The position numbers and the translations under genes were made by a program. The notes beneath the pieces were generated by a model, which was not told where the DNA came from, ran no database searches, and worked only from the letters and a program-made list of their open reading frames with translations. Positions 1 to 64,000 of a stretch of DNA of 64,000 nucleotides are shown in pieces. The stretch is from Leucoraja erinacea (lineage: Eukaryota), in contig NC_073380.1 of NCBI RefSeq assembly GCF_028641065.1, positions 60,946,001 to 61,010,000 on the forward strand. Reading direction: 5' to 3'. Numbering within the stretch: position 1 is the stretch's first letter; each line of letters opens with the position of its first letter.

Positions 1-465
1 TAGATTCTGGAGTAGTTCCTGAGGATTGGAGGGTAGCTAATGTAACACCACTTTTTAAAAAGGGCGGGAGAGAGAAAACGGGGAATTACAGACCAGTTAG
101 TCTAACGTCGGTAGTGGGGAAACTGCTAGAATCAGTTATTAAAGATGGGATAGCAGCACATTTGGAAAGTGGTGACAGTTTAAGGATAAGGGGGAAATCT
201 TTTAGGACCGAGATGAGAAAAACTTTTTTCACACGGAGAGTGGTGAATCTCTGGAATTCTCTGCTGCAGAAGGTAGTTGAGGCCAGTTCATTGGCTATAT
301 TTAAGAGAGAGTTAGATGTGGCCCTTGTGGCTAAAGGGATCAGGGGTATGGAGAGAAGGCAGGTACAGGATACTGAGTTGGATGATCAACCATGATCATA
401 TTGAATGACGGTGCAGGCTCGAAGGGCCGAATGGCCTACTCCTGCACCTATTTTCTATGTTTCTA
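1..465 (+). mobile_element. CR1 LINE fragment: RT N-terminal part fused to the 3' end (internal deletion)
   Basis: Reads ...RVANVTPLFKKGGREKTGNYRPVSLTSVVGKLLE, then jumps at ~175 to the C-terminal RTEMRKTFFTRRVVNLWNSL. Ends in the CR1 tail gggccgaatggcctactcctgcacct...(tttctatg)n. Confidence 0.9.
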
Positions 466-619
466 TAACAGCATGAATATAATCTGATTTCCATACATGA
501 ATATAGTCTTTCATGTGCTGCACCTGTTGATCAGAGCCTGGCTCTATTGTGGAATGTAATTAGGAATGTAAGTTAGCCTTACCTATTCATACCTAATCCA
601 ATTTAAAGCATAAATGTTG

Positions 620-790
620 CATTCAAATGCAAGTTAAAAGACTCGCTAAAGTATGCACCAGATTGCACAATTTCAAGCTGAAAAATGCAAAAGCTCCCTA
701 CCGTGGGAGGGGGAACACCCCCCCACCCCCGGTCGCTACGCTCCCTCGCAATGTCTCACTCTCAACTCTCACCCAATGTTGGCAGCCCTG
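620..790. mobile_element. hAT-like DNA transposon terminal fragment
   Basis: Ends in caatgttggcagccctg (reverse complement CAGGGCTGCCAAC). Subterminal layout resembles the hAT end at 40250-40328. Confidence 0.5.
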
Positions 791-876
791 TCTTACCTCT
801 CATTTTCAGTCCCCCCGCTCCCCACTTTTTTACAATTAGTCTGAAATATGGTCTCGACGTGAAACGACGTAGTGTC

Positions 877-910
877 CAAAGATTATAGAGGAGCTCCTCT
901 ATAATCTTTG
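877..910. mobile_element. 34-bp palindromic element (17+17 bp) with 8-bp TSD; P/hAT-type footprint or micro-MITE, copy 1
   Basis: CAAAGATTATAGAGGAG|CTCCTCTATAATCTTTG, flanked by gtagtgtc at 869-876 and 911-918. Confidence 0.85.
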
Positions 911-999
911 GTAGTGTCCATATCCTCCTCAGATGCTGCCTGCCGCGCTGAGTTATAGCAGTACTTTGTATTTTCGCTCAAGATTTCTGCAGCTGCAGT

Positions 1000-1273
1000 T
1001 GTCGTGTCCCCGGCTGCAAACATTGCATTGATGCGGGGGGGCGCTGGCGAGCGGAATACTACTACGCCTGCGCCAGAATGGGAGGCACGTGGGCGGGACC
1101 AAAGATACTAGAGGAGCTCCTATAGGATCTTTGGGCGGGACGAGGTCCGGGCGCGCGCACCAACTGTCACAGGCTCCCGCGCGCACCAACTGTCAAAGGG
1201 AATCTCTCTCTCTCTAGCTCTCGCGCGCGCGCACGCGCACAATCCCCCCGACTGTGACAGGCGCCCGGTCGCG
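1000..1273 (+). promoter_or_regulatory. MCMDC2 CpG-rich promoter/5' region
   Basis: GC/CpG-rich stretch directly upstream of the ATG. Contains E-box CACGTG (1085-1090), GGCGGGA twice, and CCAACTGTCA twice (1160-1169, 1186-1195). Confidence 0.7.
1100..1133. mobile_element. 34-bp quasi-palindromic element with 8-bp TSD, copy 2
   Basis: CAAAGATACTAGAGGAG|CTCCTATAGGATCTTTG, flanked by ggcgggac at 1092-1099 and 1134-1141. Confidence 0.85.
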
Positions 1274-1373
1274 ATGGCACCCGAGGATGTGGCGCTGAAG
1301 GAGGCGGCTCTCATCTACCTGGACAGGACTGGGGGGCTACACAGGTTCATCAACGACTGCAGGCGCTACAATG
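1274..1373 (+). CDS. MCMDC2: MCMDC2 coding exon 1
   Basis: [33 protein letters not shown]; donor G|gtaatt. Confidence 0.92.
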
Positions 1374-4300
1374 GTAATTTGTCCAAATGAAAAACACCTC
1401 TGATACATTTGCACTATTATTGTTTGTTTTTGTGTATGTGTGTGCATGCATGCATATGCGTGTATATGTATTTATTTATATAAATGTGTCTATAGACGCA
1501 TATATATTTTAAAAAAGTGCATCTGTATATGCACATTTTTTTCTCGTTTATTATTTTGTAGCAATGTTACAAAATTTTGAGATTTAAAAAATCAAGCCTG
1601 CAATTTATCCCATCAGATAAAGGATAAATATGTTTAATTTGACACCTAATTCACTATCATATCTTCAGTATTAAAAAGGTTATGGCCATTTTCATACTTG
1701 GAAATTAGCATCTTCCCTATTGCTTTTCCATTGACTTAACACAAAAGCTGTGATCGAGGACAGTCAAAAGCCCATAACTTACTTAAATATTAAGAGAACT
1801 GAAATAATTGTTCAGTTATTATGGATTGAAGCATTCTGAACCAAATATGAAACAATCTTACTTGGGTGACCTGAAATTAAAGCATATAATTAGTTACCTA
1901 ATTGTAGCTAATTACAAAATTCAATTACTAGATCTAAACATCTATCCATGTTTAGGGTGAACAAGAGGAAGCGGATTGAACTTTTTTGCCTTCCCTCACA
2001 GTGGGAAACGTTGATTCCGCTGTGGGGGGATGTTTTTATGTTTAATGTTAAATTCTATAGTGTTATGTTTATCTTATTTGTGTGCTGCATGGTAACTCAA
2101 ATTTCACTGTACCAATTGGTGTATGTGACATTAAATGTCCTTTGTCCTCTCCTCTTTCAGCATTGTAAAGGGATTGCTCCCTTTGTGAGTCCCTGATCTA
2201 TTCTTCCATTTCTACTGACCGATCTCAATGCACTTTTACGTGTTTGCATGGGAAAGTGATTGGTAAGGAAGGAAAAGTGGATCAGGGAGTGATTCCTTCT
2301 AAATACTGAAAGGGTCAGGTAACAATTGTAGGGATAAAATCTTGTTGGAGCTGGCATTATTGTAATATTTACTAACTGACCAGATTGCATGTACATTTAT
2401 ATTGGGACTCTTGTAGGATCAGAAATTATGTATTTGGTTTAACATTTGTTTATTTTACAGATTCCAAACAGTGTCATGCTGTATATCGCTTCATTATTTA
2501 TGTGAATCCAGCTGATCTTACAGAGTTGGATGCAAGTCTTGGGAACTGTGTTCTTCATCAGCCAATAAGAGCTACATATTTGTTTCAGTCTGTGAGTAAA
2601 TATTCCTGAATTATGCCAGTGGTGTACAAACCGTGATATTTACATTTTCATTTCAAGGTTTCCCAGTTTACATCTGATTGATGCCAGTTTACAGAGATTA
2701 AACAGTTTAAGAATGTGTTTTTCAGGTATGCTTTACATCTATCAAGACTTTGTCATTAATTCCACAATTAGAAACAGAAAATCAGGTAAGTAGGCATATT
2801 AAGTTCCAATTAAAATTAACCATGTTTAATGAATGGGTTGCACAGTAATCCTTCATATATAAGATGTAAGTAATAGGCTAGATTGGACTAATGCCAGGCT
2901 TGCAGATCCAAAGAGCCAGCTAGCTGGCAGCACACCTGTGCATGGAAATTGGACTAATGCCAGGCTTGCAGATCCAAAGAGCCAGCTAGCTGGCAGCACA
3001 CCTGTGCATAGAAATGCAGCATGAACTAGGGTTCAGCTCTGGGCACATCTGAGCCTCCCTGTCACTAGACTTTCCTCTGAATCATGGGGTCCTCATAAGC
3101 TATTGAACGGAGGGCAGGATTCACGTTGTATCTGCCCCCATAACCTTACACAGGGCATAACTGCATCTTGCACTGTCCAAGTAATTTGAGGGGGTAATTG
3201 AGCTTTATTCAATAATATTTTTAGACCTGCATGAATATTTTAATTAACTTGTGTCAGTTAAAAAGTATTTTTAAATGATTTATTTGACATTTAAGATATT
3301 TTTCTGTATGAGCTATGATAGTTGTGAGGCATAAGGCAGTCATGCAATACATTTTTTGAAGCTGTTTCACATTGCAGTGTCAGTCAAGGATCCTACATCA
3401 AAAGCCCTGGATGCAGTATAAATATCAACAAAATAAGTATGTTAATGTCCCACCAATATTGTAAGATTTCACTTCCACTGATACCTATGAATTCCTCCCC
3501 ACCCAACCTTCTCTGGGACTTCAAACAACTTGTTTTCTCTCCCAATTCTGATTAGGGATCTGTGACTTATGTTGCCTGGTCTAGTTCTAACAATTTCTTT
3601 CAAATCGTTGTGATTATTTCAAGTAGCTTCATATTTATAATTATCCAGTTTATGGTACAGCTATAAATGGTTAAAATAAAATGTTAACAGAATTGAATAT
3701 TTTCTATTGCACTTTTCCTTTTATTCTCTTCCCACCTCCACTTTAACAGTACGTGCCAGACAGCATCATGTAAGCAAACATGATGCTTGCTCAGACGTGG
3801 CAGTCCTGTCCAGCTCCTGCTCTCCACACCTGGAACACCTGGTGGTGAAGTGCCGTCCCTTCTACCTCCCAAGGGAATTCACATCCATCATCCTGACCGC
3901 GGTCTACATCCCACCCCAGGCAGACGTCCGTCTGGCACTGGAGGAGCTGCACGCCGTGGTCAACAAACACCAGACGTCTTACCCCGAGGCATTTACCACC
4001 ATTGCCGGGGGCTTCAATAAGGCAAACCTAAAGAAATCACTCCCTGACTTCCACCAACATGTCTCCTGCTGCACCAGAGGACCAAACACCCTCGACCACT
4101 GTTACACCACCATCAAGAATTCCTATCGCTCTATCCCTCTCCCTCACTTCGGTAAATCCGACCATACCGTGGTGCTGCTTCTTCCTGCCTACAGGCAGCA
4201 ATTAAAGAGCGCACCCCCAGAGGTGAGGACAGTACAGAGCTGGTTGGGGGGTGCAGAGGAACAACTACAGGACTGTTTGGAGTCTGTAGACTGGGCAATG

Positions 4301-7300
4301 TTTAAGGACTCGGCAACGGACTTGAACGAATACGCCACAGTCGTTACAGATTTCATTAAGAAATGGGTGGAGGACTGCATCCCCACCAAAACCTTCCTAG
4401 TGTTTCCCAATCAGAAACCTTGGATGAACTCTGAGATCCGCACTCTTCTGAAGACCAGACACCGGGCATTCATGTCTGATGATACAGTGGTCTACAAGAA
4501 GTCCAGGTACGACCTTGGTAAGGCCATCAAAAAGGCCAAAAGGGACCTGCTCCAAGCTGGAGGATGTTCGGCACCTGTGGCGGGGCCTGAATGCAATCAC
4601 CTACTACAAGGCGAAATCAAGAGGCAGGTCAATTGTCCGCGAAACATCACTCCCGGATGAGCTCAATGCGTTTTACGCACGCTTTGATAGCGAGAACAAC
4701 GATGTGCCTTCCCGAGCCCCCATTCACTGTGCTGGTATTTCCGTCTCAGTCACAGAGGCCGACATCAGGAAATCCTTCAGAGGGGTGAATCCTCGAAAAG
4801 CGCCTGGACCTGATGGTATACCCGGTCGTGTTCTAAAAACCTGTGCGGACCAACTGGCTGGAGTTTTTACGGACATTTTCAACCTCTCACTTCTGAGGTT
4901 CCCACCTGCTTCAGAAGGGCATCAATTATATCAGTGCCCAAGATGAGTAAGGTGACGTGCCTCAATGACTATCGACCTGTGGCACTAACGCCAGTGGTGA
5001 TGAAGTACTTTGAGAGGTTGATCATGGCGCAAATCAACTCCTACCTTGACAAAAACTGGACCCACTGCAGTTCGCTTACCGCCACAACAAATCAACGGTG
5101 GATGTGATCTCGCTGGCCCTCCATTTCGCTCTAGACCACTTGGACAACAAAAACTCATATGTCAGGCGGTTATTCATTGATTACAGCTCGGCATTTAATA
5201 CTATCATCCCCTCCAAGCTGGTTACCAAACTCGCAGAACTGGATCTCTGCGCATCCCTCTGCAATTGGATCCTCGACTTCCTCATTCACAGACTAGTCTG
5301 TTCATATTGGTGGAAATGTGTCAAACTCGATAACGATCAGCACGGGAGCACCTCAAGGCTGCGTGCTCAGCCCCCTGCTGTACTCACTCTATACTCATGA
5401 CTGTGTAGCCGGTCATAGTGCGAACTCCATCATCAAGTTCGCTGACGACACCACTGTTGTGGGACGTATCACTGATGGGGATGAGTCAGAGTATAGAAGA
5501 GAGATCGAGCAACTGTCCATATGGTGCCAGCACAATAACCTGGTCCAACACCAGCAAAACCAAGGAACTGATTGTGGACTTTGGAAGGAGTAGGATGGGG
5601 ATCCACAGTCCCGTTTATATCAACAGGTTGATGGTTGAAAGGGTCAAGAGCTTCAAATTCCTGGGCGTGCACATTCTCTGAAGATCTTTCCTGGTCCGAG
5701 AACACTGATATAATTATCAAGAAAGCACATCAGCGCCTCTACTTCCTGAGAAGATTACGGAGAGTCGGTTTGTCAAGGAGGACTCTCTAACTTCTACAGG
5801 TGCACAGTGGAGAGCATGCTGACCGGTTGCATCGTGGTTTGATTCGGCAACTTGAGCGTCCTGGAGAGGAAAAGGCTACAAAAAGTAGTAAACACTGCCC
5901 AGTCCATCATCGACTCTGACCTCCCTTCCATCGAGGGGATTTATCGCAGTCGCTGCCTCAAAAAGGCTGGCAGTATCATCAAAGACCCACACCATCGTGG
6001 CCACACACTCATCTCCCTGCTACCTTCAGGTAAGGTACAGGAGCCTGAAGACTGCAACGACCAGGTTCAGGAATAGCTACTTCCCCACAGCCATCAGGCT
6101 ATTAAACTTGGCTCGGACAAAACTCTGAACATTAATAGCCCATTATCTGTTATTTGCACTTCATCAGTTTATTTATTCATATGTGTATATATTTATATAA
6201 TGGTATATGGACACACTGATCTGTTTTGTAGTCAATGCCTACTATGTTCTGTTGTGCTGAAGCAAAGCAAGAATTTCATTGTCCTATCAGGGCCACATGA
6301 CAATAAACTCACTTGAACTTGAATAATACTGCTGCACAACACTGACACTAAATTGTATTAATGAAATTATAGAGTGATTTAATCAAAATCCAATTGTTAG
6401 AAGAAAGCAATCCACTAATCTTCATCTTTATGTTCAAGGTTAATGTTGTGCTAAAGCTTACACACTTACCTTCATTGCCAAATTACTCACTTGACCTTTG
6501 TCAATTCCCCCGTGGATATCAGTTACTGAGATATTATACGGTCGAAGGAGTGGTTACTGCACTGACAACTGTGACAAAATACACACAAGGTGCAAGATTC
6601 CTATGCTCTGAATCAAACTGCCCCTTTTCAACAGGTAAGAAAAATAGACAACGGGAAACTTAATAAAAACGTGCTTTGCATGTGTTATTTATTTTACCAT
6701 TTATTACACTTCTAATTATAATTTGATTTGATATCCTTGGAACATAAATCTGGAAATGTTGAAATATTTACAAGTAATAATTGCAATCTGTTTTATAATT
6801 AAGTTAGGAAGTTCTTTCTCAGTATTTTATTCCAAACCTCACATGGTTTTAAATGTTTTTCTTCCTGGATTAGTCATAGAATCTTACTCCGTGGAAGCAG
6901 GCCCTTCGGCCCAACTTGCCCACACCGGCCAATATGTCCCATTTATACTAGTCCCATCTGCCTGCATTTGGCCCATATTCCTCTAAATGTGCCCTATCCA
7001 TGTACCTGTCTAAATTTTTCTTAAACATTGCAATAATACCTGCTTCAACTACCTCCTCCAGTAGATCAATTCCTACACCTACCACCCATTGTGTGAAAAA
7101 GTTACCCCTCAGGTTCCTATTAAATCTTTCCCTCCCCACTCAAGTTAAACCTACGTCCTCTGGTTCTCAATTCTCTTACTCTGAGCAAGAGGCTCTGTGC
7201 GTCTACCCGATCTATTCCTCTCATGAATTTGTACACCACTATCAGATCACCCCTCATCCTCCTGTGCTCCAAGGAGTAGAGTCCTAGTCTGCTCAACCTC

Positions 7301-10300
7301 TCCCTATAGCTCAGGCCCACGAGTCCTGGCAAGATCCTCGTAAACCTTCTCTGCACCCTTGCAGCTTTCCTATAACGCTGTCCAAAACTGAACGCAATAC
7401 TCTAAATACGGCCTCACCAGCGTCTTATACAACTGCAACATGACTTCCCAATTTCTATACTCAATGCTCTGACTGATGAAAGCCAATGTGCCAAAAACCT
7501 TTTTGACCACCCTATCTAACTGTGATGTTACTTTCAATGAACTCTGTACCTGTACTCCTACATTTCTCTGCTCTACAACACTCCCCAGAGCCCCACCATT
7601 CACTGTGTAGGTTCTGCCCATGTTATTGCTCCCAAAACACAACATCTCTGTATTAAATTCCATCAACCATTCCTCAGCCCACCTGCCCAACTGATCAAGA
7701 TCATGCTGCAATTTTTGACAACCGTCTTCACCATCTACAATACCTCCCATTTTTATATAATCTGCAAACTTGCTGCCATGTACGTTCTTATCTAAATCAT
7801 TGATATAAATATATATAACAGCAGTGGGCCCAGTACCGAACCCTGAAGCACACCACTAGTCACAGGCCTCCAGTCTGAAAAGCAACCTTCTACCATCACC
7901 CTCTAATTCATTCCATGAAGCCAATTTTTTTATCCATTCAACTATTTCTCCTTGAATCCCATGAGATCTAACCTAAAGCAGCCTTCCATGTGAAACCTTG
8001 TCAAATGCCTTACTAAAATCCATGTATACGTCTACAGCTCTGCCTTCAAAAACCTTTTTGGTCACATCTTCAAAAAACGCAATCAGATTCGTGAGACACG
8101 ACCTCTCACGTACGAAACCATGTTGACTATTCCTAATTAGCCCTTGTCCATCTAAGTGCATGTATATCCTATCCCTCAGAATACTCTCTAGTAACTTTAC
8201 AATCAGATATTAAGCTCACTTGCCTGTAGTTCCCAGACTTTTCTCTGCAGCCCTTCTTAAATAGAGGCACGTTTACCTCCCTCCAGTCTTCTGGCACCTC
8301 GTCTGTATTTAACCACGACTCATTAATCTTAGCGAGGGCTCCTGCAAATTCCTTTCTAGCTACCCACAGCGTCCTCAGATATATCTAATCAAGCCCGGAA
8401 GAATTGTCGATCTTCATGCACGTTGGGATCTTCAGCACATCTGCGTCCATAATATTGACTGCTCTCGAGATACTTGAGAGCAAGATCCCCCGTCTTCTTG
8501 TCTTTTTCCACGATAAAAACGGAAGAAATACTTATTGAGGACCTTGTCCATCTCCTGTGGCTCCACAGAGTTGACTGCTTTTATTCCTGGGGTCCCACTC
8601 TCTTTCTGGTTACCCTTTTCCCCTTTAGGTGCTTTTAATGCTCTGCAGCGGACAGGAGCCCTTCAAAGGGTCATCAACACCGCACAAAAAATCACTGGCT
8701 GCCCACTGCCCTCCCTGAAGGACATCTTCAGCTCTCGCTGCCTTGGCAGGGCAGCCAACATCCTGAAGGACCCTCCCCACACTGGACACAACCTGTTCCA
8801 CCTGCTGCCCTCTGACAGACGGTACAGGTCTTTCAAAACTCGCACAAACAAACACAGAGACAGCTTCTACCCCATAGCCATACGTGAACATAACAATGCA
8901 AAATAAGAAATAACACTCACATTCAACTGAATGGTTCTACCTCAGCTGCTATTGTTATTTATCTGTAATTTTTTTTAATATATATATATTTTTACCTTTT
9001 CTTATATATTTAAAATTGCTCTTGTGAAGCGCACCGTGGGATTGACTTTTAAATGTTGTTGTACCATGTGCAATGACAATAAAGAGATTCATTCATTCAT
9101 TCATAAAATTGTTGTTTATAAAATGTGATTGTTTGATGACATATTACCGTTGCCATCGCTCTATGTGTACAATTCTTTAGACAACTTCAGGGAATCATCT
9201 ACATTTGCAAAGTGCCTATCACACCCTTAACAGAACCCAGTTAAAATGCAGTCTTTAATTTATTTTTAATGCAAGTGCTGCCACAGATCCAGGCTGTTAT
9301 TTTAATAAATATTAGCAACCACCCTTATGGAGGCCACCTTTTATCAGTAGGTAATTTTATTTAAGGTAGCTTATTATCTAATACTAAAGCACTGTACATT
9401 TGTATGGTTCCTGAGTCATAGAGCCACAGTACAGAAACAAGCCCCTCGGGCCAACTTGTCCATGCCAACTAACTTGTCTATTTGAGCTAGTTCCATGTGC
9501 CTGTGCCTGGTCCTTATCAGTTACACAAGACATTGGTGAGGCCACATTTGCAGTACTGTGATCTGTTTTCGTCACCCTGCTAAAGGAAGGAGACAATTAA
9601 CCTTGAAAATGTGCAGAGATTTACGAGGATGTTGCTAGGACTCGAGTTATAGGGAAAGATTGGACAGACTAGGATGTTTTTTCTTGAAGCACAGGAGACT
9701 GAGGGGTGATCTTATAGAGGTGTATAAAATCTTGAGGGGAATAGATAGAATGATACACAGTATCTTTCCCCATGTTAGGAGAATCAAGAACCAGGGGACA
9801 TACTGTAAGTTTAAGGGAGAGGGACAACCTTTTTGTTCAGAGGGTGGTGGGTATATGAAATTAGTTGCTAGAGAAGATAGTTGAGGCAAGTACTATAAGG
9901 ACAATAAGAAACTTTAGACATTTAAGATACTTAAGATAGATTAAGACGACAGATGCATGGATTCGAAAGGTTTAGAGGGATATGGGACAAACATGGGCAA
10001 ATAGGACCAGCTTTGATGGGCCATCTTGTTTAGCATGGAAGAGTTGGGCTGAGGGGCCTGTTTGTGTGCTGTATGATTCAACAACTCTATTTCCCACCAA
10101 ACTCTTCCTAGCCATGGACCTGTTGAAATGTATTTTAAATATCATAATTGTACCGTCTATAGCTTCTTGTAGCAGCCCATTCCATATATGCACCACCTTG
10201 TGTGAAATAGCTTTAAACCTTTGAAACCATTACCCTCTCACCAGACAATACTGCAAGCAAATGTTTGCACTGATGTTAAGAACGCAGATCATAAAAGAAA

Positions 10301-35450: not shown

Positions 35451-37641
35451 GGACTGCAGTGGAATCAGTCAAGGGAATCAGGATTGGGGACTGGGCATGA
35501 AAGGGAATGACAGCCAAAGATCTTACATAATGACAGTGGTAGACCAAATGGCTGATTTCTCTTCATTAATCAGTTCAAAGACCATAAACTTGGCATTTTG
35601 GTATCGGTTTATTAGTGGATTGATATTTTATTTTTAGATGTCTGCTCCTTAAGTGCTTATGATAAAGGGCCTGCTATTGGTATATGTTAATTATTTATCA
35701 CTCCACAATAAAATTGTATGATTCACTAATGTTGATTAAGTTGTGAAAAGAGAGGTAAATTAATCCCAAAATTATTGGCATCTCAAAGGGGAAAATACTA
35801 GCTTATCAAAGTATTTACTGAATTAAAAACTAACTAATCAGTGGTGGGATGAGAGGTTTAAAACACAGGATGTTAAAGGCTACTTACATATTTAGTACTG
35901 CTCTGGGATTATAATTTTGATGCATCTTGAAACATTTTGTAACCACACTACTAATACCACATTACCACAACTAATACCACAATATTTTAAAATTATGAGA
36001 CATCTAGAGGGTGAAAATTAGTACAATTTATCTAGAAGACATCTAGAGACGGTGAAGAGGAAGAACAATTTTTCTAGAAGAAATCTAGGGACGGTAATTA
36101 GAAGAAAGTTAGAACAGTGCAGCAGAAGAACAGGTCTTTCAGCTCACAATGTCTGTGCCAAACCTGATGCCAAGACTATCCCCCATCGGCCTGAACGTAA
36201 TAGATATCCCTCCATTCCCTGTGTAGTAGCCATTTAGTTTAACTCAGTATGTTATAACTATAACCAGTTACCTTTAAATTTTATCTGCCTGTAATTATGT
36301 GGGTGTGATTTATACGTAATCTGAGGCGTGTTTGCGACTGGGATTCTGGCGCAGAGGAGTTTAGTTGAGTAGGAATGTGCTCTTTTCATTAGAGGTTTGA
36401 TGTGACTTGGTCCAGTGGAAAAAAATGGACATGATGGAGGGATGGAAAGTAACTGCCCGGAAACATACAAAATACATTGAGAACCCATGCTTGCAGAAAT
36501 CTTTGAAAGAAAGGCGAGACATTTGCATACTGCAAAATTTGTAGGCTTCACATTAGCATTACATGTGGTGGAAACAATTACATTAAAAAACACACTGAAA
36601 AGATAAAGCACATTGAAAATGCTGAGACAGTTTCAATGTCGCGCCCGCTAGCTTTAAGGTTGCCTCTCGCTCAGTCAGAAGACTTCAGTGTTGTAAGAGT
36701 TGAAGTAATGTTCTCAGATTTTCCCTAATGTTTCCTGACAGCAAGATCGCACAAAAGTACTCCTGCGCTAGGACAAAGACAAAACATATTCTCAAATCTT
36801 TGGCTAATGAAGATGCCAGAAATCTAGCTCAAAGTATGAAACAAAGTGTCTTCAGTGTTGCCACGGATGGGAGCACAGATATGGATGCTGTAAAGCTGTA
36901 CCCAGTTCTGGTCAAAACATTCGACAACAATGTTGGACAAGTTAAAGTCAACCCGCTGTCTGTAATGGAATGCTCTGAACGTTCCACGGCATTCAAAGTT
37001 TTCAATATTCTGAATGAAGAACTGGCATCATGGGGAATCCCCTGGTCGAAATGTGTAAGCTTCGCTACAGACAATGCCACCGTCATGGTCGGAAAGCACA
37101 ATGGTGTAGCCACCCACATACGAGCACAGAATTCAAATGTGTACATTATGGGATGTCCTTGACATCTGATGCACATTTCTGCCCAGAGAGGAGCAAAATG
37201 TCTTAGCTACCAAATCGATGATCTGCTTGTGGTGACTATCTCGTCAAAAGTCAGCTAAGGCACCAAGCCGTCATTCAGCTCCAACAGGAACATGGGGTGG
37301 AAATACAGAAGCATGTGTCAACACGGTGAGTACATTTGTTCTGTTTTTTAAGAAAAACGTAGAATGTAGAAATTTAATCTTACCAAACTTGGTTTAGTGC
37401 CATGTTGGTTATGTGGACAATGTTAGATACTTAGACTCTACACCTATTTTAAATTTTCATTATTTCCTTGATTTAGTCATTTTTATTTTTTTTTTACACA
37501 TTTAGGTGGTTATCACTACACAAAGCAGTCTGTCGTCTTCTTGACAACTAGGGTCCACTGGAGGACTTTTTCAAGAATGAAAACGAGAACAAGTCTAAGA
37601 GAAAGGCTGAACCTGATGCAACCTTTCCAAGGAAGAAGAGT

Positions 37642-38551: not shown

Positions 38552-39629
38552 TGTTTTTATTGTTGATGCTAATGATTTTTTATTGTTACGGGATTTTATT
38601 ATTTTGTTTGATATCACTTAATTTATTGTTTATGTGCATGTTTATAAAATTAATATTTTAAACATTACTTATTGATGCATGCTTTTGATCAAAATGTTAT
38701 TTTTGTTGACTCATGCTTTAACTAATCCCATATTGTATGATTGACATACAATGTACATTTGTTTTAATTTGTTTTCAGTTGTACATTGTTTAAGTTAGAT
38801 CATTGATCCTTTACATTCTCATTTGCATGTGACAGGTACTGCAGAGGGATGAACCCCAAATACACAACATTCATCACATCTTGCTGAGCCAACTGGCTAC
38901 TCTGCTGACAAAGTTCATAAAACCAGGTGCAATTGCCTTTAAAGTGATGTGAGAAAACTGGACGAATGACAAATCAATCCACAAAGAACAGTGACATCCA
39001 AATTGGATATGTCAAGCTTTCCTCAATGAAAACAAGGACAAACTCGACACAGCAGGTTTCTACAAAAGTGTAAAGAAATTCTACACAGCAGCTGCAACAT
39101 ACATTATCCTTTTCATGATGAGCTCCTTGTCAACTCCACAGTTGTAGATATCAAAGACGGGTTGAATGTGAAGTTTGAGTTTGTAGAGTACTTTGTCAAG
39201 CACTTTGGTCTAGTTCAATCTGAATGTATGGATTAGCTTCAGTCAGAGTTCAATCTCTATCAGATCGACAGAGACATCCACTACAAGATGGCGTGCGCAT
39301 TGACAGGCAGTGGCATGAAATTGGGGAAATGGAAGACATGATATCCAGGAAGAAGAAGTACCCACTTATAACCACAGAGATGAAATCAGTGCTGGTCATC
39401 TTTCATAGCAACACGGACTGTGAACATGTATTCAGTATTGTGGGCAAAAACAAAATAAAGAGCCTCCATGAACACTGAAACAGTGAGCTCATTAATTACA
39501 CAGATTGGCGTTGGCAAGCAGCAATCAGACCTGTTATTCAACATCATATGCCAATGATGTTCTCAGAAGATGCAAGAAGGCTACATATGAGGCCCTCAAA
39601 GCTGGAAAGAGAACCAGTTATTTTGTTTA

Positions 39630-41923: not shown

Positions 41924-44362
41924 AAAACTTAATCTAACTCAACTAACTACTTTTAATACATTAAATTTTATAAAAATCATTTAAACACCAGTTTAGGACA
42001 TTCCCCAATAGAATTCTTTGTCAACTAACTTTTACAAATCACAATAAATAAACACATAATTTTTACCTTCATATTCTTCAAAACGGGCACAACAGTAGAT
42101 ATCAACATCCAATCCATTCATGTTGCATTTCTTATGGTTTGTAAGACGTCTGTTGAAAATATCTGCCATGCCCAATAGGTAATATTGACAAAGAAAATAA
42201 TCAATCCATTATTTTAATTTCCCAAGTTAACACAAACAGATTCAAACTTTTCTCTTCAGATGCTGATTTTCTATCTATTAAAATCTGAAAAATAGATTTT
42301 CTATCTACTTGTTTTCCATCACATTATATTATATTACTTATTCTTTTCAACACCAAATTATTTGGATACATTATACCAAGAAGAAAAATGAGCTTAAAAA
42401 GTGCTTTACGAACAGTTTGTGGACCAGCTTGAGAAGGTCATACAAAGATCAAAATATTCAACTGTGATGTTCACAGAGCAGTTTTGCCTACTTTATTTGT
42501 GTAATTCTGTGATGAAATTGGCAAGACTGGATCTACCATATGTTTTTGTAACTCCCAGCATTTACCTCACAGGTGTGATATCTGCAGCCTGCTTTTAAAG
42601 TAACATTCTCCCAGCTATAGAATGAATCCATAATGATTGGGCTGGGGAAAGGGGGAAGAAAGTTCACCAATGATGACATGGATAGGCAGGAAGAACAGTA
42701 CCCATGGGAACAATGTTTAAGAGACGGGGAGGGCAAAGCAAACCTACACCCACCAGCAGGCACGCTAGACAAGAAAAATGTTTCTAGAAACAAACTTATT
42801 CTTATTGGATCACACTTTAAAAGTAGCAGGTTATAAACAATTCCATATAACTCTCAGAATACAAGTACTAGTGATGCCAGCTCAAAGTATAGAATGCAGG
42901 AATTAAGTTGATGGACTAAAAAAAAGATATTGAATACACAGTATAAAGTGGTGAATAAAGGAAGGGAAGATGAGTTACATCATTGCTTATCAAAGCTTGA
43001 AAAAGCTGGTGAAAATTAACTACAGATGAAGAAAGAAACTTTACAATCTTAGATTAAATAATGAAATAACTTAGAATAGCAATCAACAAAATGCTCCTCA
43101 AGTATATAGTTCTCTCCAGAACAAGAAACATATTCTATGGTTGTAAAAGTAATGGATAATAGCCATGAGATTAAATATTGATGTAAAAGATAAAATATAG
43201 AGAACTTTATGCCAAAAAAAGAATCTGTTGGCCATGCAGAACGGGAAAAAGTTAAATATGAAAATTATAGACAAAAGGTTCAAATTAGGCTGTATATTTA
43301 AATTACTTTCTCATACAACTGTATTTATAACAAACAAAATTAAAATTAATTTATTTTCTATCAAAAATAAACATTGATTTGGTTGTGGTCTGAAAGGGGA
43401 TTTACTTAAATAATCTTCCAACCAATAGAAATCTAACCTGTAATATGGCTCACAAAATATGTTTAACGATTAATAATTATGGTATAAGGTTCATAGTTCC
43501 ATTACATAGGAACACATATTCCAACACAACAAATTTGATACATCCACTGTAAGTTCATCTCAAGACTTTTGACTCAAAAAACAGTTTATAATACCGCAGA
43601 GGCAACCAAACAAAGATCCATTGAAATCTCAGCAGAAATAAATCACTGACCATTACTTTTTTCTCTTCTGTAGAGAATAGTGGCATGGTCAGATACACTG
43701 GACAGCTATGAGCATGATGGCCCTGTGGCAAGGGGCAATTTATCATCCAAATTAGAACAAACAGCTGCTACCATGATTTATGATGACACCTTCACTAGCT
43801 AGACTATAAAAGTCGCATGTCTTTTTGTAGACTAATTTATCATTTATGGAGAATTTTTGTGGCAGTGATGAAAATTAGTTTCTACAATCAGCTCTACGTG
43901 GCCATATTTAGGACAGCTCCCCATCTATGAAGTAACAATACGACTTTGACACACTCTACACCCCCCTCCCCCCACCCCAGAACAACCATAACGGGGGAGG
44001 GGGCAGGGGTTGCCTATGACCTGCTTCTCTGTTCAACATCATGGCAATACTTGGCCTCAGAGCTACCTTCCTGTCCAACCCTCACATCTTTCACTTTTTT
44101 ACTAACTGACCCTACCCACAGCAATAAATACTCCAGCCTCAACTATACTTAAAACTCAGTGTCTACACCAAATTGGCTGAAGAATTCCAAAGATTCACAC
44201 TCACAAAAGGTTTTTCATTTGCAACCTCAATGGTGGGTCCCATATCCTGAGCCTCTGAACCCTTGTTCAAAACATTCCACCAGGAGAAATATCTTCTTGC
44301 CACCTACCATGTCAAGTCTCCTCAAATTTTCACACCTATATATTAAAACAGTACACGATAGA

Positions 44363-45578: not shown

Positions 45579-46431
45579 GTCAGGTGATTGTGAATTGAAA
45601 AGGATAAACAAGTGATGATGTTTCCATACAATTGCTGCCCTTGTCACTTGACATGGTGGATGTTACAGCTCGAGAAGTACTATAAAAAAAACTTAAGTGA
45701 CTGGGTGACTGCAGACCATCATGTAGATGCTGCATATGAAACAGTGAGCAGGGCAGAAGGAGTGAACATTCAAGGTGATCTGTGGGCTGCCAATCAAACA
45801 GATTGTATTGCATTGAATGAGGGAGATGATTGTTGCAGCTGTACTCATTTAAGCATGTAGAATGTGTTCCGCTACATTGCTCTCCAACACCTTATTGTTA
45901 GTGGAAAGTCAAAGGTGAATCTTTGAATGTAGAAAATCCAATGCCTGGTATGTTCAGTGCCATGGTAATTATGTATCTAGTTTGTGATCAATGATGAAAC
46001 CCAAGATGTTGCCAATGGAGGATTTGGCAATCACAATGTCATCAAATAGCAATAGAGGTGGAAGATTACCTGTGTTGGGGATGGCCGATGCTTTCTTCAA
46101 CTTCTCAAATGTTATTTAGATCTTTACAGCCAAGCCCCAATGTTGTTCAGGTTTGTAAAAGGCATGTACTGCTCATCCACTGTGGAGAAAATAGAAATGG
46201 TCATTACTCTGATCATTCATGTTTCTAACGTAAAGATGAAGCCATTAAAGATGATTGGGCCTGTGACACTGCTCTGTGGGATCCCTGCCACAATCACAGA
46301 AATGAGAATAGCCTGCAACAGCTATCTGACTTTGAACATATAACCATATAACAATTACAGCACGGAAACAGGCCATCTCGGCCCTACAAGTCCATGCCGA
46401 ACAATATATAATTTTGAGTTACGAGGTTTAT

Positions 46432-52099: not shown

Positions 52100-52660
52100 A
52101 TCAACTAGGCTCGGAAGCGACTAAAACGTCTAGAAAGGTCAGCCAGATGATATAAAACGGTTTGAATTTATAAAGAAGAACATTTTCTGCTCGGTGTGAT
52201 AAGGAAGGCAATTGTAGAAAGGATTTAGTTACCGATTCAGCACGTTTTCTCGGTCGTTCTGTTGTGGCCCCGAGGTCTCGGTGCACGAGAAGGCGCCACG
52301 TCAACGTTTTTCTGGCCATGGGAAGATAAGATGCATTAAAGTCTGATCTGTGGGCGACCAGAGGTCGTGTTGGCTGAAAGAGCTCGATGGACGCCGATGC
52401 CGATGCCGATGCCGACCGGGGCACCATTGCCCGCCGCGCGGGAAGGAAGCGGCCGGGTCACCGTTACAAACGCTAACGTTCGCCCGCGTGGTGGAGTCCG
52501 CGAGCATGCGCACAGCTCCAGTCCCAGCCCCAACCCCAACCCCAACCCTAACCATAGCAACAGCCCTAACCCTAGCAACAGCCTCGCCATTGGACCGAGC
52601 GCTAGCGGGAGCGGCGGGCGCACTGCTGTCGTGAATGGTAATGTGGAGAGAGTGGCGTTT
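52100..52660 (-). promoter_or_regulatory. CpG island; candidate promoter/first exon of the snoRNA host gene with a 5'TOP start
   Basis: Minus strand CTTCCTTCCCGCGCGGCGG from 52449; NRF1-like GAGCATGCGC and RFX-like (c)tagcaac upstream; possible donor CG|GTAACT at 52232. Confidence 0.65.
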
Positions 52661-52680
52661 GTTACTAAAATTACTCGTGT

Positions 52681-52753
52681 AGAACAGTACTCGTGGTAAC
52701 GTAGTACATGTAATTTAGAACAGTACTCGTGGTAACGTAGTACATGTAATTTA
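52681..52753. repeat. 37-bp tandem duplication
   Basis: agaacagtactcgtggtaacgtagtacatgtaattt twice. Confidence 0.9.
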
Positions 52754-52992
52754 GGATAACACTAAATTCTTAATTAGTCCAGGTTTTTAGAAGTTATGGA
52801 GAGAAGGCAGGAGAATGGGGTTAGGAGGGAGAGATAGATCAGCCATGATTGAATGCCAGAGTAGACCTGATGGGCCGAATGGCCTAATTCTACTCCTCTC
52901 ACTTATGACCTTGCTCATGATAATTTAGGACAGTGCTGGTGGTAATGTAGGACAGTGGGTCCATTGCATTTATTACTTGTGGTGATTGGGGG

Positions 52993-53026
52993 CAAAGATT
53001 ATAGAGGAGCTCCTCTAGTATCTTTG
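52993..53026. mobile_element. 34-bp quasi-palindromic element with 8-bp TSD, copy 3
   Basis: CAAAGATTATAGAGGAG|CTCCTCTAGTATCTTTG, flanked by attggggg at 52985-52992 and 53027-53034. Confidence 0.85.
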
Positions 53027-53759
53027 ATTGGGGGAGGAGTCTATTACCAGCATTACTGATAGCAACCGAGGAGATGGACACAAAATGCTGGAGTAACTCA
53101 GTGGGACAGGCAACATCTCTGGAGAGAGGAATGGGTGACGGTTCAGGTTGATACTCTTCTTCAGACAGTATCAGATCTTCTGATAGTAATGTAGGGAACG
53201 GGCCATTTACTTATGGATGGCAAAATAGCATCATGGTCAGTTACTATTATTACCGTTGGTAATTAAGGAAATGTTCTGCTAATTAGAGTAATATGTTAGG
53301 GGCAGTTTGTTACTATCATTACTGGTAGTAATCCAGATGAATAAATTTGCCACAAGCAATTATATTGTTGACGGTAAGAATGGGAGTAGGTTATTTCCTG
53401 TTATTACTTCTGGTAATCTGGGAGGACTTCTTTTACTGACATTACTGATGGTGATGTAGGATAAACAGTCGGAAACAGCCTTTACTGATGGTTATATGGA
53501 AATATACTTTATTACAAATAGAAGTGATGATAATATAGGAGAGATAGAAGATAGACACAAAATGCTGGAGTAACTCAGCACATCAGACAGCATCTGTCAC
53601 AGAAGATCAACGGTGAGGGAAAGTCTTCTTAAATGTCTGAGAAGATTTGTCAAGCCCAGTAAGATTCTCTCGAAGCTCAACAGATTCTATAGAATGATTT
53701 CTGACTGGATGCATCTCACCTGTCATGGTAACTGCTCTACTCTTGACTGCCTGAATCTG

Positions 53760-60601: not shown

Positions 60602-62762
60602 CTGAAATTCATGAAGGAAGATAAATATTTATAACACTTGCTGGTCCGACTGTTTCATTTTAAAAACATGAACATACAATACAAATCGGCGGTTTAAAAT
60701 CAGAACGCCTGTCAAACGAAACGCTTTTTGTTTTATATATATTGGCCAAGTATTTTGTTTTCACCGATTTTCAGATAAATGTGATACCTGCATGGCCCTC
60801 GACTTCATGCACAACAATTGTGTTTTTGGGAGGCATTGAGATTATTGTTTACATCAGACCAATTCAAATACAAAATTACAATTGAGATATTACCGATTCA
60901 ATGTATTGCAATTACAGTCATCCGTTATATTAGTGTTAAATTATAAAAACATATTGGCGACGTTACTCATTTTGGAAGTTGATTTTTACATATTGGAGCC
61001 GTGTTTCCGAGTAATATTTACAATTTCCCCGATTCAGATATGTGTGGGGAATAAGTACATCTTCAGCAAGGAATCGTCATGATAATTTATGTGTGTGTTT
61101 TTAGCTTAGTCTTTCAGTCGTAATTACTTGAAAACGTCGTTTTATGTTACATGACATTTGTATTTTAAATGATGATTGATGCAAGTGTTATCAGACTGTA
61201 ATTTAAACAATGGTTAGTACTTCCAGTTATACTGCACAAATGGTTGTAATGGATTTAAACTGCTGGACATTAAAGTAGAAGAATAAAGTTACGCACAACA
61301 TTTACCCAGATCAATACAGACCGATAAAATTAAAAAATGTACGACAAAATAATCCCGCAATATTGGAATTGCAACATGTTTTACTATTTCCATTTAGTTT
61401 ACCTTCATTTTTTTTACGCATTAACGTTAACTTCAAACTAAAACTATTCGCAATGGCAAATGGATTGTGTTGAAATTCAAATATATGATCGGTAAGGCAG
61501 GGAATAAATACTTTGGTATTGGATATTAGATTGTCTTCATTTAAAAAAAAAAATTATTTTGTTTTCTCATATATTTTCTGTCCAATTTTCGGCTCGTTTC
61601 TTATTTTAAATTTGGGCGCATCTTAAAACCAGATTTCTGAGAAACGTGAACATTTTAGGGATTGCTACTTTCATTTTGAGCTATTCAAATCTAGGAGTAC
61701 CTTAAAAAAACCGCAGAGTTTGAGTCCATAACTGAAAAAGTCAAAGAATGTCCAGCAATTGATAGATCAAAAACTCTATATTCTGACTTCAGTACTAGCC
61801 AGCAAAAAGTTTAACAAAATTAGTTTTCAATGTGTTGATTTATTGTGGGCAGTTGACAATTTAATTTAAGAAAGCCGAAAAGTGAAACGTGAGTCCTTTT
61901 TAAAAGGTGTGATTCACTTTACACGGGAGTGAGGGAGAATTTTTCTTCTCTAGTTTGCATTTCAAACCATTGGAAATTACGCAGTTTTCCATCTGTGTTC
62001 TGGGTGATTTCATACGTTCGGAATCTGCCAACAATCCTTTTATCAAAACTGCCTGCTCGTCGCACCAATCGCATAGTTGATCATTTAACAAAACGAGATC
62101 ATATATAGTAATAGAGAGAAAATGATTCGATATGTATGTGAATGTATAACATTTCTTGAATTATCGTTTTAAGTGAATGTTAAAATATTGAAGGCTCAAA
62201 GTATGTTTGGAATGTTACACTGTTTATAGAAACAGTCTACAATTGCAATGGATATTTAGAAGGGGCAGATTATTTAAGCGAAACGATTAAAACATATATT
62301 TTCACAATAAAGAGGCATTGTTCCTACTTTGACCGGATGCAGATATCCGTCCACTTTGAGGGAATGCATTAACTCAGCAGATCTTCGACCTTCTCCTTCC
62401 TCCAAACTTTCTTCCAGGGTGCGGGTTAGATGTGCAATATAGGTGGTTGCTAGGATTAGGACATCCAGTTTGGACAGTTTAGTGTCCGGAGGGACTGACG
62501 GTAGAGTTTTTTGCAGCTCTAAGAAAGCATGTCGCAGGGTTTGTACTCGGCTCCGCTCCCGCGCTGCGTTTGCTGCTGCAGGCCTGCCCCTGATGCGAAC
62601 CACTTTCGGGCGAGATTGTAATTCAGAGAGCTTTCGAGTGGGACAGGTTAGAGAATCGGAATCCGGACAGGGGCTGGGACTGGGGCTGGAACCTGGACTA
62701 TCCTCGATTACGGCCTTTGGAACGGCTGCAGAATCCATTGGACTTTTTTTAGGCTGAACCAT
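60491..62762 (-). CDS. TCF24: Transcription factor 24 (bHLH); 2 coding exons, 181 aa
   Basis: [55 protein letters not shown] bHLH, and GYLHPVK|KWPMRSRLY motif split by a phase-0 intron (60602-62327). Position next to SNHG6/MCMDC2 favours TCF24 over TCF23. Confidence 0.92.
62328..62762 (-). CDS. TCF24: TCF24 first coding exon (exon acceptor at 62801)
   Basis: tatttatttttcag| acceptor; ATG at 62762 ([11 protein letters not shown]...); donor AAA|gtagga. Confidence 0.88.
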
Positions 62763-64000
62763 TCCCCGGGACAAACGCAATGGTCATAGGTAAGTGTCAA
62801 CCTGAAAAATAAATACATTCAATCTAATTTAACAGCGTTTGGTTTAGTTTTCTAAATTGTGACGAATAAAATCGATCATATATATATACACTAGATGAAT
62901 TGTGCTTTGTGAGGAATGGTGTATCAAATAACTCATAGTCGTTGCGATTAACTGGACGCCCCTTGCTTCCAGAGATGCTGCCTGGCCCGCTGGGTTCCCC
63001 CAGCAGCTTGTTTTTTTTTTGCTCCAGATCACAGCATCTGCAGTCTTTGGATCTTTATTTTGCTTTGTAAGTATCACATTTAGCCAATGTTCCAAACATA
63101 TATAGTTTTGTTTTGCAGTAAAGAAAGTTACAACAATGAATTAAGACATACTACAATAACCAGTTGCAAAATCAAGTTTGAAACGGCTCGAAGGGCCGAA
63201 TGGCCTCCTCCTGCACCTATTTTCCATGTTTCTATGTAATATCGCCCCACAATCTTTAAGCTGCGCCAATTGGTTTCAGCGATCTGTAAATATTTTGAAA
63301 AAATGAAGAAATTCCGTGTGTCTTAAATCTGTGAACTACCAAACTTGTATTTTGGCGTTCTATATATACATGGCGCCCCTGCTTTGTTTTTGCTGCAGAC
63401 CAGAATAAACCAACGCTGTATATATACATGGCGATTTTGTTCTGTAAACGGAAACGCGTGCTAATGTGTTACATAGAGTTTTAAAATTACCTTCTTGCAG
63501 GAATCCAGCGTTGATTGTGGAATTTGTTACGTTGGGTCGCTGTGAAAGCTTTCCATGTCCAAGCGTGTTATCCTTGTTTAAAATGCAGGAGTGGGCTCTT
63601 TCTATCCCCCAAGACGAACCTTCTTATAAAGCAACGATGGTAATGATTTCGGCTTCGAGCTTTGGTGGAGAAGAGCGTCGAGTGCACACCTGAGTGAACT
63701 CCCTCCTGCCTCTGGAACCAGTCGTTGACAGCTCAAAGCGCTGACAGTCGCTCCTCTGAGGGCCAATTAATCACCGTGTAGCCACCGCTCACTAACAAGT
63801 AATAGGACTCCTACGCCAACTCTCTTAAAGTGATCACATCCCAGTCTGCGTCCAGCGCAGACTACTTTTAAACAGAAAAAAATGCGCAAAGATCAAGGTG
63901 GTCTAATTTACATTTTGCAACCAAATGGAAATATATCGAGTATTTAAAAAAAAGACAGTGATGTATATTTTACTGCCACATAAATCAATGCAAAGGGTGC

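What the first reader, a model, noticed from the sequence alone, without database searches (positions are those of the whole stretch)
869..1141. 34-bp 17+17 palindromes with perfect 8-bp TSDs at promoters: candidate P-element excision footprints or micro-transposon family
Seen: three independent insertions, each exactly 34 bp of two 17-bp arms starting CAAAGAT and ending AGGAG. They lie at 877-910 (TSD gtagtgtc), 1100-1133 (TSD ggcgggac) and 52993-53026 (TSD attggggg). Arms come in three variants (CAAAGATTATAGAGGAG, CAAAGATACTAGAGGAG, CAAAGATCCTATAGGAG) in different pairings. All three sit within ~600 bp of a CpG-island promoter, and I found none elsewhere in the 64 kb. Established: Drosophila P transposase makes 8-bp TSDs, cuts with a 17-nt stagger that leaves ~17 nt of each terminal repeat at the donor site, and prefers promoter regions. 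Inference: these are excision scars (or minimal MITEs) of a recently active P/THAP9-like family in this fish. A hAT origin is also compatible with the 8-bp TSD and CAAAG terminus.
Basis: partly seen in the sequence, partly recalled or inferred. Interest (0 to 1): 0.85.

Follow-up and report, generated by a model that had tools for sequence, protein, structure and literature searches.

The report
Transposon excision scars at skate promoters
Three 34-letter DNA palindromes, each flanked by an 8-letter duplication, are copies of a high-copy family shared by related skates, and they look most like the scars a P-type jumping gene leaves when it cuts itself out.

Summary
Palindromes of 17+17 nt sit at 877-910, 1100-1133 and 52993-53026, each between perfect 8-bp direct repeats. 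The 64 kb holds no other arm with 2 or fewer mismatches and no longer element with these ends.

New here:
- Summed contig depth rises about 100- to 7,000-fold exactly on the palindromes in runs of four organism labels, so this is a high-copy family.
- Contigs of three other labels, 2-3.5% diverged, run through the filled sites. These insertions are therefore old, not recent.
- A minority of family copies lack 3 nt at the inner end of an arm.
- Sites 1 and 2 lie 364 and 141 bp upstream of an MCMDC2-like start codon inside a CpG island. Site 3 lies 253 bp from another island.

The layout (8-bp duplication, up to 17 nt of each end, 8-bp duplication) matches sequenced Drosophila P excision junctions.

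Best reading, about 0.5: immobile donor-site scars of a P-type family. I could not read a parent element. CAAAG also fits the hAT terminal motif, and a GAGCTC microhomology could give 34 bp without a 17-nt cut.

First readers noted the same palindromes on other DNA of this genome. Those notes are untested.

The parts
869..876 (.). site 1, left copy of the 8-bp target duplication GTAGTGTC
   Evidence: identical to 911-918
877..910 (.). site 1, 34-bp perfect palindrome (arm A plus its reverse complement)
   Evidence: DNA hairpin -12.4 kcal/mol, z -7.9; summed contig depth at 888 is about 670-7,000 times that of single-copy contigs in four runs
911..918 (.). site 1, right copy of the target duplication
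1092..1099 (.). site 2, left copy of the 8-bp target duplication GGCGGGAC
1100..1133 (.). site 2, 34-bp palindrome with arm B on the left and arm C on the right; 15 of 17 positions pair
   Evidence: spanned without a gap by contigs of organism labels B, D and E (records 31, 13, 21)
1134..1141 (.). site 2, right copy of the target duplication; label B has G for A at 1140
   Evidence: table 3
52985..52992 (.). site 3, left copy of the 8-bp target duplication ATTGGGGG
52993..53026 (.). site 3, 34-bp palindrome with arm A on the left and arm B on the right; 15 of 17 positions pair
53027..53034 (.). site 3, right copy of the target duplication
661..1460 (.). CpG island that holds sites 1 and 2 (GC 0.54, CpG o/e 0.85; window mean o/e 0.47)
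1274..1374 (+). exon-1-like ORF starting with ATG and followed by a GT donor at 1375; taken as the MCMDC2 start
   Evidence: The gene name comes from note s1-910950 and my recall of the human N-terminus, not from a search
52181..52740 (.). CpG island (GC 0.56, o/e 1.13) ending 253 bp before site 3

Best explanation
Each 34-mer is an immobile scar at a former donor site of a cut-and-paste transposon of the P (THAP-transposase) type.

Proposed steps:
1. The element inserted and made an 8-bp target duplication (shown).
2. It was later excised by cuts staggered 17 nt into each terminal repeat, so each flank kept a 17-nt 3' tail of the element (inferred).
3. Vertebrate end joining filled in and ligated the two non-complementary tails without loss. 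That leaves TSD + 17 + 17 + TSD (inferred).
4. Copies 3 nt shorter are tails that were nibbled before joining (inferred).

The three arm variants reflect different parent subfamilies or unequal left and right ends. The scars cluster at CpG islands because the parent inserted into open promoter chromatin, as P does in flies.

With a 17-nt stagger, a 34-bp remnant would have no duplex left after cutting. It also has no room for internal transposase-binding sites, so it should not move again.
For: - All three copies have perfect, site-specific 8-bp TSDs and arms of exactly 17 nt.
- Drosophila P cuts 17 nt inside its TIR, makes 8-bp TSDs, prefers promoters and origins, and binds sites internal to the TIR (passages of PMC7776569).
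- Sequenced P{wa} donor-site junctions read 8-bp TSD, up to 17 nt, optional filler, up to 17 nt, 8-bp TSD. The common products are 30- and 32-bp palindromes, and one is a 17+17 blunt join (Tables 1-3 of PMC2895639).
- The family is high-copy in runs of four organism labels. Length variation of at least 10% share was seen only as 3-nt losses at the inner ends (places 888 and 894), never as longer arms (tables 2 and 4).
- All 3 copies lie in or within 253 bp of one of the five strong CpG islands. Those islands plus such flanks cover about 10% of the window (my arithmetic). Two copies are 141 and 364 bp upstream of an exon-1 ATG.
- Untested lead: first-reader notes on this genome report CAAAGAT palindromes of 21-38 bp with 8-bp TSDs, and P-like THAP transposons whose notes also hold the word CAAAGAT.
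Against: - I read no parent element. The window holds no THAP-like exon (2 overlapping regex hits at one place, neither convincing) and no single arm.
- The arms start CAAAG, which is the hAT YARNG motif. Drosophila P and zebrafish Pdre2 both start CAT.
- In flies the full 17+17 join is rare: 1 isolate in the three tables. Here it is 3 of 3 and the main form. That needs an extra assumption about vertebrate end joining.
- The self-complementary GAGCTC centre offers another route to exactly 34 bp.
- One search aligns only contigs at least 85% alike, so longer or very different forms could be missed.
- Promoter enrichment rests on 3 copies at 2 loci, with thresholds chosen after seeing the data.
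Confidence: 0.5

Rival explanations
1. The 34-mers are a self-propagating micro-MITE. A TIR-only element is mobilised in trans by a transposase that needs only the terminal 17 bp, and it has been amplified to hundreds or thousands of copies by its own transposition.
For: - It shows high copy number, TIRs, TSDs and no coding capacity, which are the hallmarks of MITEs.
- One dominant length (34 bp) is what a master-copy family gives (table 4).
- Three of three copies in the window have the same length.
Against: - At 34 bp it is well below any MITE I know of (recalled; typical MITEs are 50-800 bp).
- Drosophila P transposase binds sites internal to the TIR.
- The three copies carry three different arm pairings (A/A, B/C, A/B), so at least three masters would be needed.
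- No filled-versus-empty difference was seen at sites 1 and 2 among four organism labels.
- Other notes report a spread of 21-38 bp with constant outer ends. That fits variable repair better than descent, but it is untested.
Confidence: 0.22
2. They are donor-site or deletion remnants, but the number 17 has nothing to do with a 17-nt cut. The parent could be hAT or P, with TIRs of 20 bp or more that contain the self-complementary hexamer GAGCTC at positions 15-20. Interrupted gap repair, or end joining at that hexamer, collapses the element to 14 + GAGCTC + 14 = 34 bp.
For: - All three centres read GGAGCTCC, with GAGCTC exactly at the symmetry point.
- Microhomologies within the tails dominate fly P junctions.
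- CAAAG plus an 8-bp TSD fits hAT.
- A weak hAT-like relic lies in the window (DUF4371, E 3.6e-4, below Pfam's cut-off).
Against: - hAT excision is known to leave hairpinned flanks and no TIR sequence (recalled, not tested here).
- The hAT-like relic at 36.5-39.5 kb has no CAAAGAT ends (1 weak candidate pair, unrelated).
- The parent TIR beyond position 17 is unknown, so this rival is untested rather than supported.
Confidence: 0.2
3. They arise by chance, or are an assembly or library artefact such as an adapter hairpin.
For: None found.
Against: - The chance expectation is about 6e-11 per window (arithmetic).
- Contigs assembled independently from runs of four studies carry the same sites.
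- The TSDs differ between sites.
Confidence: 0.01

Closest known systems
Drosophila P-element excision footprints (end-joined donor sites after P{wa} excision; PMC2895639, Tables 1-3 read)
   Same: - The 8-bp target duplication is kept on both sides.
- Between the duplications lie up to 17 nt of each inverted terminal repeat, joined head to head.
- The products are 30-34-bp palindromes.
- The parent prefers promoters.
   Different: - In flies these are laboratory events at single loci, mostly 14+2+14 or 15+2+15 joins through AT/TA microhomology. Here the full 17+17 join dominates.
- Here the scars are fixed, shared between species, and present in hundreds to thousands of copies.
- The terminal sequence is unrelated (CAAAGAT versus CATGATG).
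Zebrafish Pdre2 / THAP9 P-like elements (PMC10983969, passages read)
   Same: It is a vertebrate P-type family with 8-bp TSDs and an active transposase in a fish.
   Different: - Pdre2 has 13-bp TIRs starting CATACC, plus distant subterminal repeats.
- The passages I read report no TIR-only scar family.
- The cleavage stagger of a vertebrate P-type transposase is not stated there.
hAT superfamily non-autonomous elements (PMC3014272, passage read)
   Same: They have 8-bp TSDs and a YARNG terminal motif, which CAAAG satisfies.
   Different: - hAT MITEs are far longer and keep subterminal repeats.
- hAT excision footprints are not expected to hold TIR sequence (recalled).

Membership tests
P superfamily (as the source of the scars) | 8-bp target-site duplication | tested here: met
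   3 of 3 copies have perfect 8-bp direct repeats
P superfamily (as the source of the scars) | Donor site keeps at most 17 nt of each terminal repeat (17-nt staggered cut) | tested here: inconclusive
   3 of 3 arm pairs are exactly 17+17. One search shows only shorter (-3 nt) variants at 10% share or more. The cut itself was not observed, and the GAGCTC microhomology is an alternative cause
P superfamily (as the source of the scars) | Autonomous partner with the same termini that encodes a THAP plus RNase-H-like transposase | not testable with these tools
   None in the window. Notes s1-141732, s1-908659 and s1-910357 claim such elements in this genome, but I could not read their sequences
P superfamily (as the source of the scars) | Insertion preference for promoters and open chromatin | tested here: inconclusive
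   3 of 3 copies lie in or within 253 bp of a strong CpG island. This is n = 3 at 2 loci with a post hoc threshold
hAT superfamily | 8-bp TSD and YARNG termini | tested here: met
   CAAAG fits YARNG; the definition comes from PMC3014272
hAT superfamily | hAT transposase-encoding partner with these termini | tested here: inconclusive
   The only hAT-like ORFs in the window (36507-37159 and 39224-39475; DUF4371 below cut-off) have no CAAAGAT ends
MITE | Short, non-coding, TIRs plus TSD, high copy number | tested here: met
MITE | Evidence of its own mobility (filled versus cleanly empty orthologous sites) | tested here: not met
   Site 2 is filled in all four organism labels. Site 1 is filled in A and B, its right half is seen in D, and it was not shown to be reached in E. 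No empty allele was seen.

The most novel reading that the evidence does not exclude
Skate genomes carry a fossil record of hundreds to thousands of fixed P-type excision scars. Each scar marks one past cut-and-paste event. The 17+17 length shows that a vertebrate THAP-type transposase uses the same unusual 17-nt staggered cut as the Drosophila enzyme. The positions of the scars show promoter homing in a vertebrate germ line.
Probability: 0.4. Interest if true: 0.8.

Novelty: new variant of a known kind. Interest (0 to 1): 0.62.

Why it matters
Excision footprints are normally seen one at a time in experiments. A fixed, genome-wide family of them would let transposition history be counted from donor sites as well as from insertions. 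It would also give natural evidence for the cleavage geometry of vertebrate P/THAP9-type transposases, and show where such elements landed (promoters and CpG islands) without any survivorship bias from retained elements.

Such 34-bp repeats are also too short for standard repeat libraries. They go unannotated while adding 42 bp, and sometimes duplicated factor sites, to core promoters.

Tried and rejected
- Longer elements with these ends in the window: none.
- THAP zinc-finger pattern in six frames: 2 overlapping hits at one place (42536-42712, minus strand), not convincing.
- Paralogous empty sites for site 3 in the window: the immediate flanks 52906-53076 are unique.
None has a second, inverted arm, and the contexts are unrelated microbial sequence, so these are chance hits.
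- hAT-like relic at 36.5-39.5 kb as a possible parent: no matching ends.
- Rfam on the whole window: 0 matches at gathering score.
- Literature: searches found no paper describing TIR-only palindromic scars as a family in skates or any vertebrate. This covers only the open library; supplements and Repbase were not visible.
- Target-site motifs (hAT nTnnnnAn, P GC-rich palindrome) are recalled, and n = 3 gives no power, so I dropped them.
- The MCMDC2-like exons 1 and 2 were read apart. I built and searched no joined model, and I did not confirm the gene name by a protein search.

Full report
**Observation**

Searches show three 34-bp palindromes at 877-910, 1100-1133 and 52993-53026. Each is made of two 17-nt arms that begin CAAAGAT and end GGAG. 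Each lies between perfect 8-bp direct repeats: GTAGTGTC, GGCGGGAC and ATTGGGGG.

The arms come in three variants that differ only at positions 8, 9 and 12. They are paired A/A, B/C and A/B. The first palindrome is perfect. The other two pair at 15 of 17 positions (DNA hairpins of -12.4, -8.3 and -8.0 kcal/mol; 0 of 200 shuffles fold as well).

A search for all three arms on both strands with up to 4 mismatches found 6 exact arms, all in the doublets. It also found 5 hits with 3-4 mismatches and no partner.

Two structure-based scans found nothing else convincing. One looked for any terminal inverted repeat plus an exact 8-bp duplication within 6 kb. The other looked for CAAAGAT/ATCTTTG pairs within 8 kb with a near-exact duplication. 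Shuffled controls gave 0-5 and 0-1 weak hits.

**What the reads add**

I laid Logan contigs of four runs on 300-1800. The runs carry four organism labels: A, the likely source, plus B, D and E.

- *High copy number.* Summed contig depth is 17-35 in the unique stretch 1014-1064. At place 888, inside palindrome 1, it is 16,352, 249,692, 18,265 and 38,680. In the bins over palindrome 2 it is 2,200-9,700. The tool warns that summed depth is not a copy number. Even so, a rise of two to nearly four orders of magnitude confined to the palindromes, in all four runs, means a high-copy family in all four organisms.
- *Shared, old insertions.* Single-copy contigs of B (record 31), D (record 13) and E (record 21) cross site 2 with no 42-bp gap. 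For site 1, B has both halves (records 30 and 31) and D has the right half. E has a contig on the left flank that I cannot show to reach the palindrome. These contigs differ from the window by 11 of 521, 3 of 337 and 13 of 373 letters. B even has a substitution in the right TSD copy (place 1140). The insertions therefore predate the split of these organisms. 'Recently active' is not supported by these loci, and perfect TSDs are simply what low divergence predicts.
- *Length variants.* The only length variants at 10% share or more are 3-nt losses at places 888 and 894, the inner ends of the arms. At 888 the shares are 10%, 28%, 7% and 40%. At 894 they are 2%, 13%, 4% and 2%. No longer forms appear. 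The caveat is that only contigs at least 85% alike are laid.

**Context**

One search finds five strong CpG islands (at least 500 bp, o/e at least 0.8) in a window whose mean o/e is 0.47. Sites 1 and 2 lie inside the first island (661-1460). Site 3 lies 253 bp after the last (52181-52740).

An ATG ORF at 1274 ends at a GT donor at 1375. A second ORF follows an AG acceptor at 2460 and ends at a GT donor at 2591. I read the two apart, built no joined model and ran no protein search. The name MCMDC2 comes from note s1-910950 and from my recall of the human N-terminus.

On that reading, site 2 ends 141 bp and site 1 ends 364 bp upstream of the start codon, which is core-promoter territory.

The five islands plus 260-bp flanks cover about 10% of the window. 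Three of three copies falling there has P of about 0.001, or about 0.01 if sites 1 and 2 count as one locus. The threshold was chosen afterwards, so this is only suggestive.

**What it is**

Site-specific 8-bp duplications around a shared sequence mean insertion by a DNA transposase that makes 8-bp staggered target cuts. What remains is nothing but two terminal repeats.

The closest documented object is the end-joined donor site of a Drosophila P element. P transposase cuts the 3' strand at the element's tip and the 5' strand 17 nt inside the 31-bp repeat. Each flank therefore keeps a 17-nt, non-complementary 3' tail. Sequenced junctions read 8-bp TSD, up to 17 nt, optional filler, up to 17 nt, 8-bp TSD. 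The commonest are 14+AT+14 and 15+TA+15, and one isolate is the blunt 17+17 join. No arm exceeds 17 nt.

The skate palindromes have this anatomy at its upper limit. P also prefers promoters, and its transposase-binding sites lie inside the element beyond the repeat. A 34-bp remnant has no room for such sites. With a 17-nt stagger, cutting it would leave no duplex at all. That argues for dead scars rather than a mobile element (inference).

The predominance of the no-loss join would follow if vertebrate end joining fills in across non-complementary 3' tails better than the fly pathway does. That point is recalled knowledge and was not tested here.

**What speaks against it, or stays open**

- I could not read any parent element. 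The window has none. The tools gave me no route to other parts of this genome. A metagenome scan for the arm returned only chance microbial hits.
- CAAAG fits the hAT terminal motif YARNG, and hAT also makes 8-bp duplications. The two P-type ends I saw in print start CAT.
- GAGCTC at the centre is self-complementary. A parent repeat of 20 bp or more that contains it would collapse to the same 34-mer by microhomology, whatever the stagger.
- A high-copy family with one main length is also what a tiny MITE would look like. Against that are its size, the three different arm pairings in three copies, and the absence of any empty allele at two sites in four organisms.

**Earlier notes of this scan (leads only)**

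First readers reported the same CAAAGAT palindromes with 8-bp duplications on other DNA of this genome. The reported lengths are 28, 32, 30-36 and 21-38 bp.

They also reported several P-like transposons with THAP exons and 8-bp duplications. A look-up for the two words 'caaagat thap' lists those notes too. One follow-up calls the genome little skate and its element a dead P-type copy.

If those notes are right, the parent is P-type, and the length spread with constant outer ends fits variable repair. I tested none of this.

**Literature**

Searches found no paper on such a scar family in skates or other vertebrates. Only the open library was searched. Supplements, Repbase and three papers I asked for were not available.

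**Verdict**

The feature is real, old, high-copy, shared between species and associated with CpG islands. My odds:
- about 0.5: scars of excised P-type elements that preserve the 17-nt tails;
- about 0.2: remnants formed through the GAGCTC microhomology, from a parent of unknown superfamily;
- about 0.2: a mobile micro-MITE.

It is a new variant of a known kind. Interest is 0.62.

Noticed in passing
window 1086-1141: The target of insertion 2 overlaps a CACGTG box (1086-1091) and a GGGCGGG box (1091-1097). The element ends in G, so the duplication recreates a second GGGCGGG at 1133-1139. The insertion thus doubled a GC box about 140 bp upstream of the MCMDC2-like ATG. The motif names are recalled.
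   Followed up: no
window 36507-37159 and 39224-39475, + strand: These ORF pieces look like a decayed hAT-type transposase: a zinc-finger-like start, DUF4371 at E 3.6e-4 (below Pfam's cut-off), and a C-terminal piece with no Pfam hit. A CpG-rich insert lies between them. I found no convincing ends and no CAAAGAT termini.
   Followed up: partly
Rfam at gathering score found no match anywhere in the window. A repeated unit ending ...tctacattCAAAGATTCACC recurs at 45925, 46861 and 47732.
   Followed up: no
window 300-466 and 1557-1800: Many contigs join 466 directly to 1557-1559 (table 5). The two very high-depth flanks are therefore halves of one repeat family, split in this window by about 1.09 kb that holds the CpG island and both palindromes.
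   Followed up: no
window 52520-52600: A run of CCCCAA/CCCTAA telomere-like units sits inside the CpG island next to site 3, followed by a 36-bp tandem duplication at 52680-52754.
   Followed up: no
window 62274-62780, - strand: An ORF with a helix-loop-helix domain (Pfam HLH, E 1.6e-14). This fits a TCF24-like neighbour of MCMDC2, as in human synteny (the synteny is recalled).
   Followed up: no
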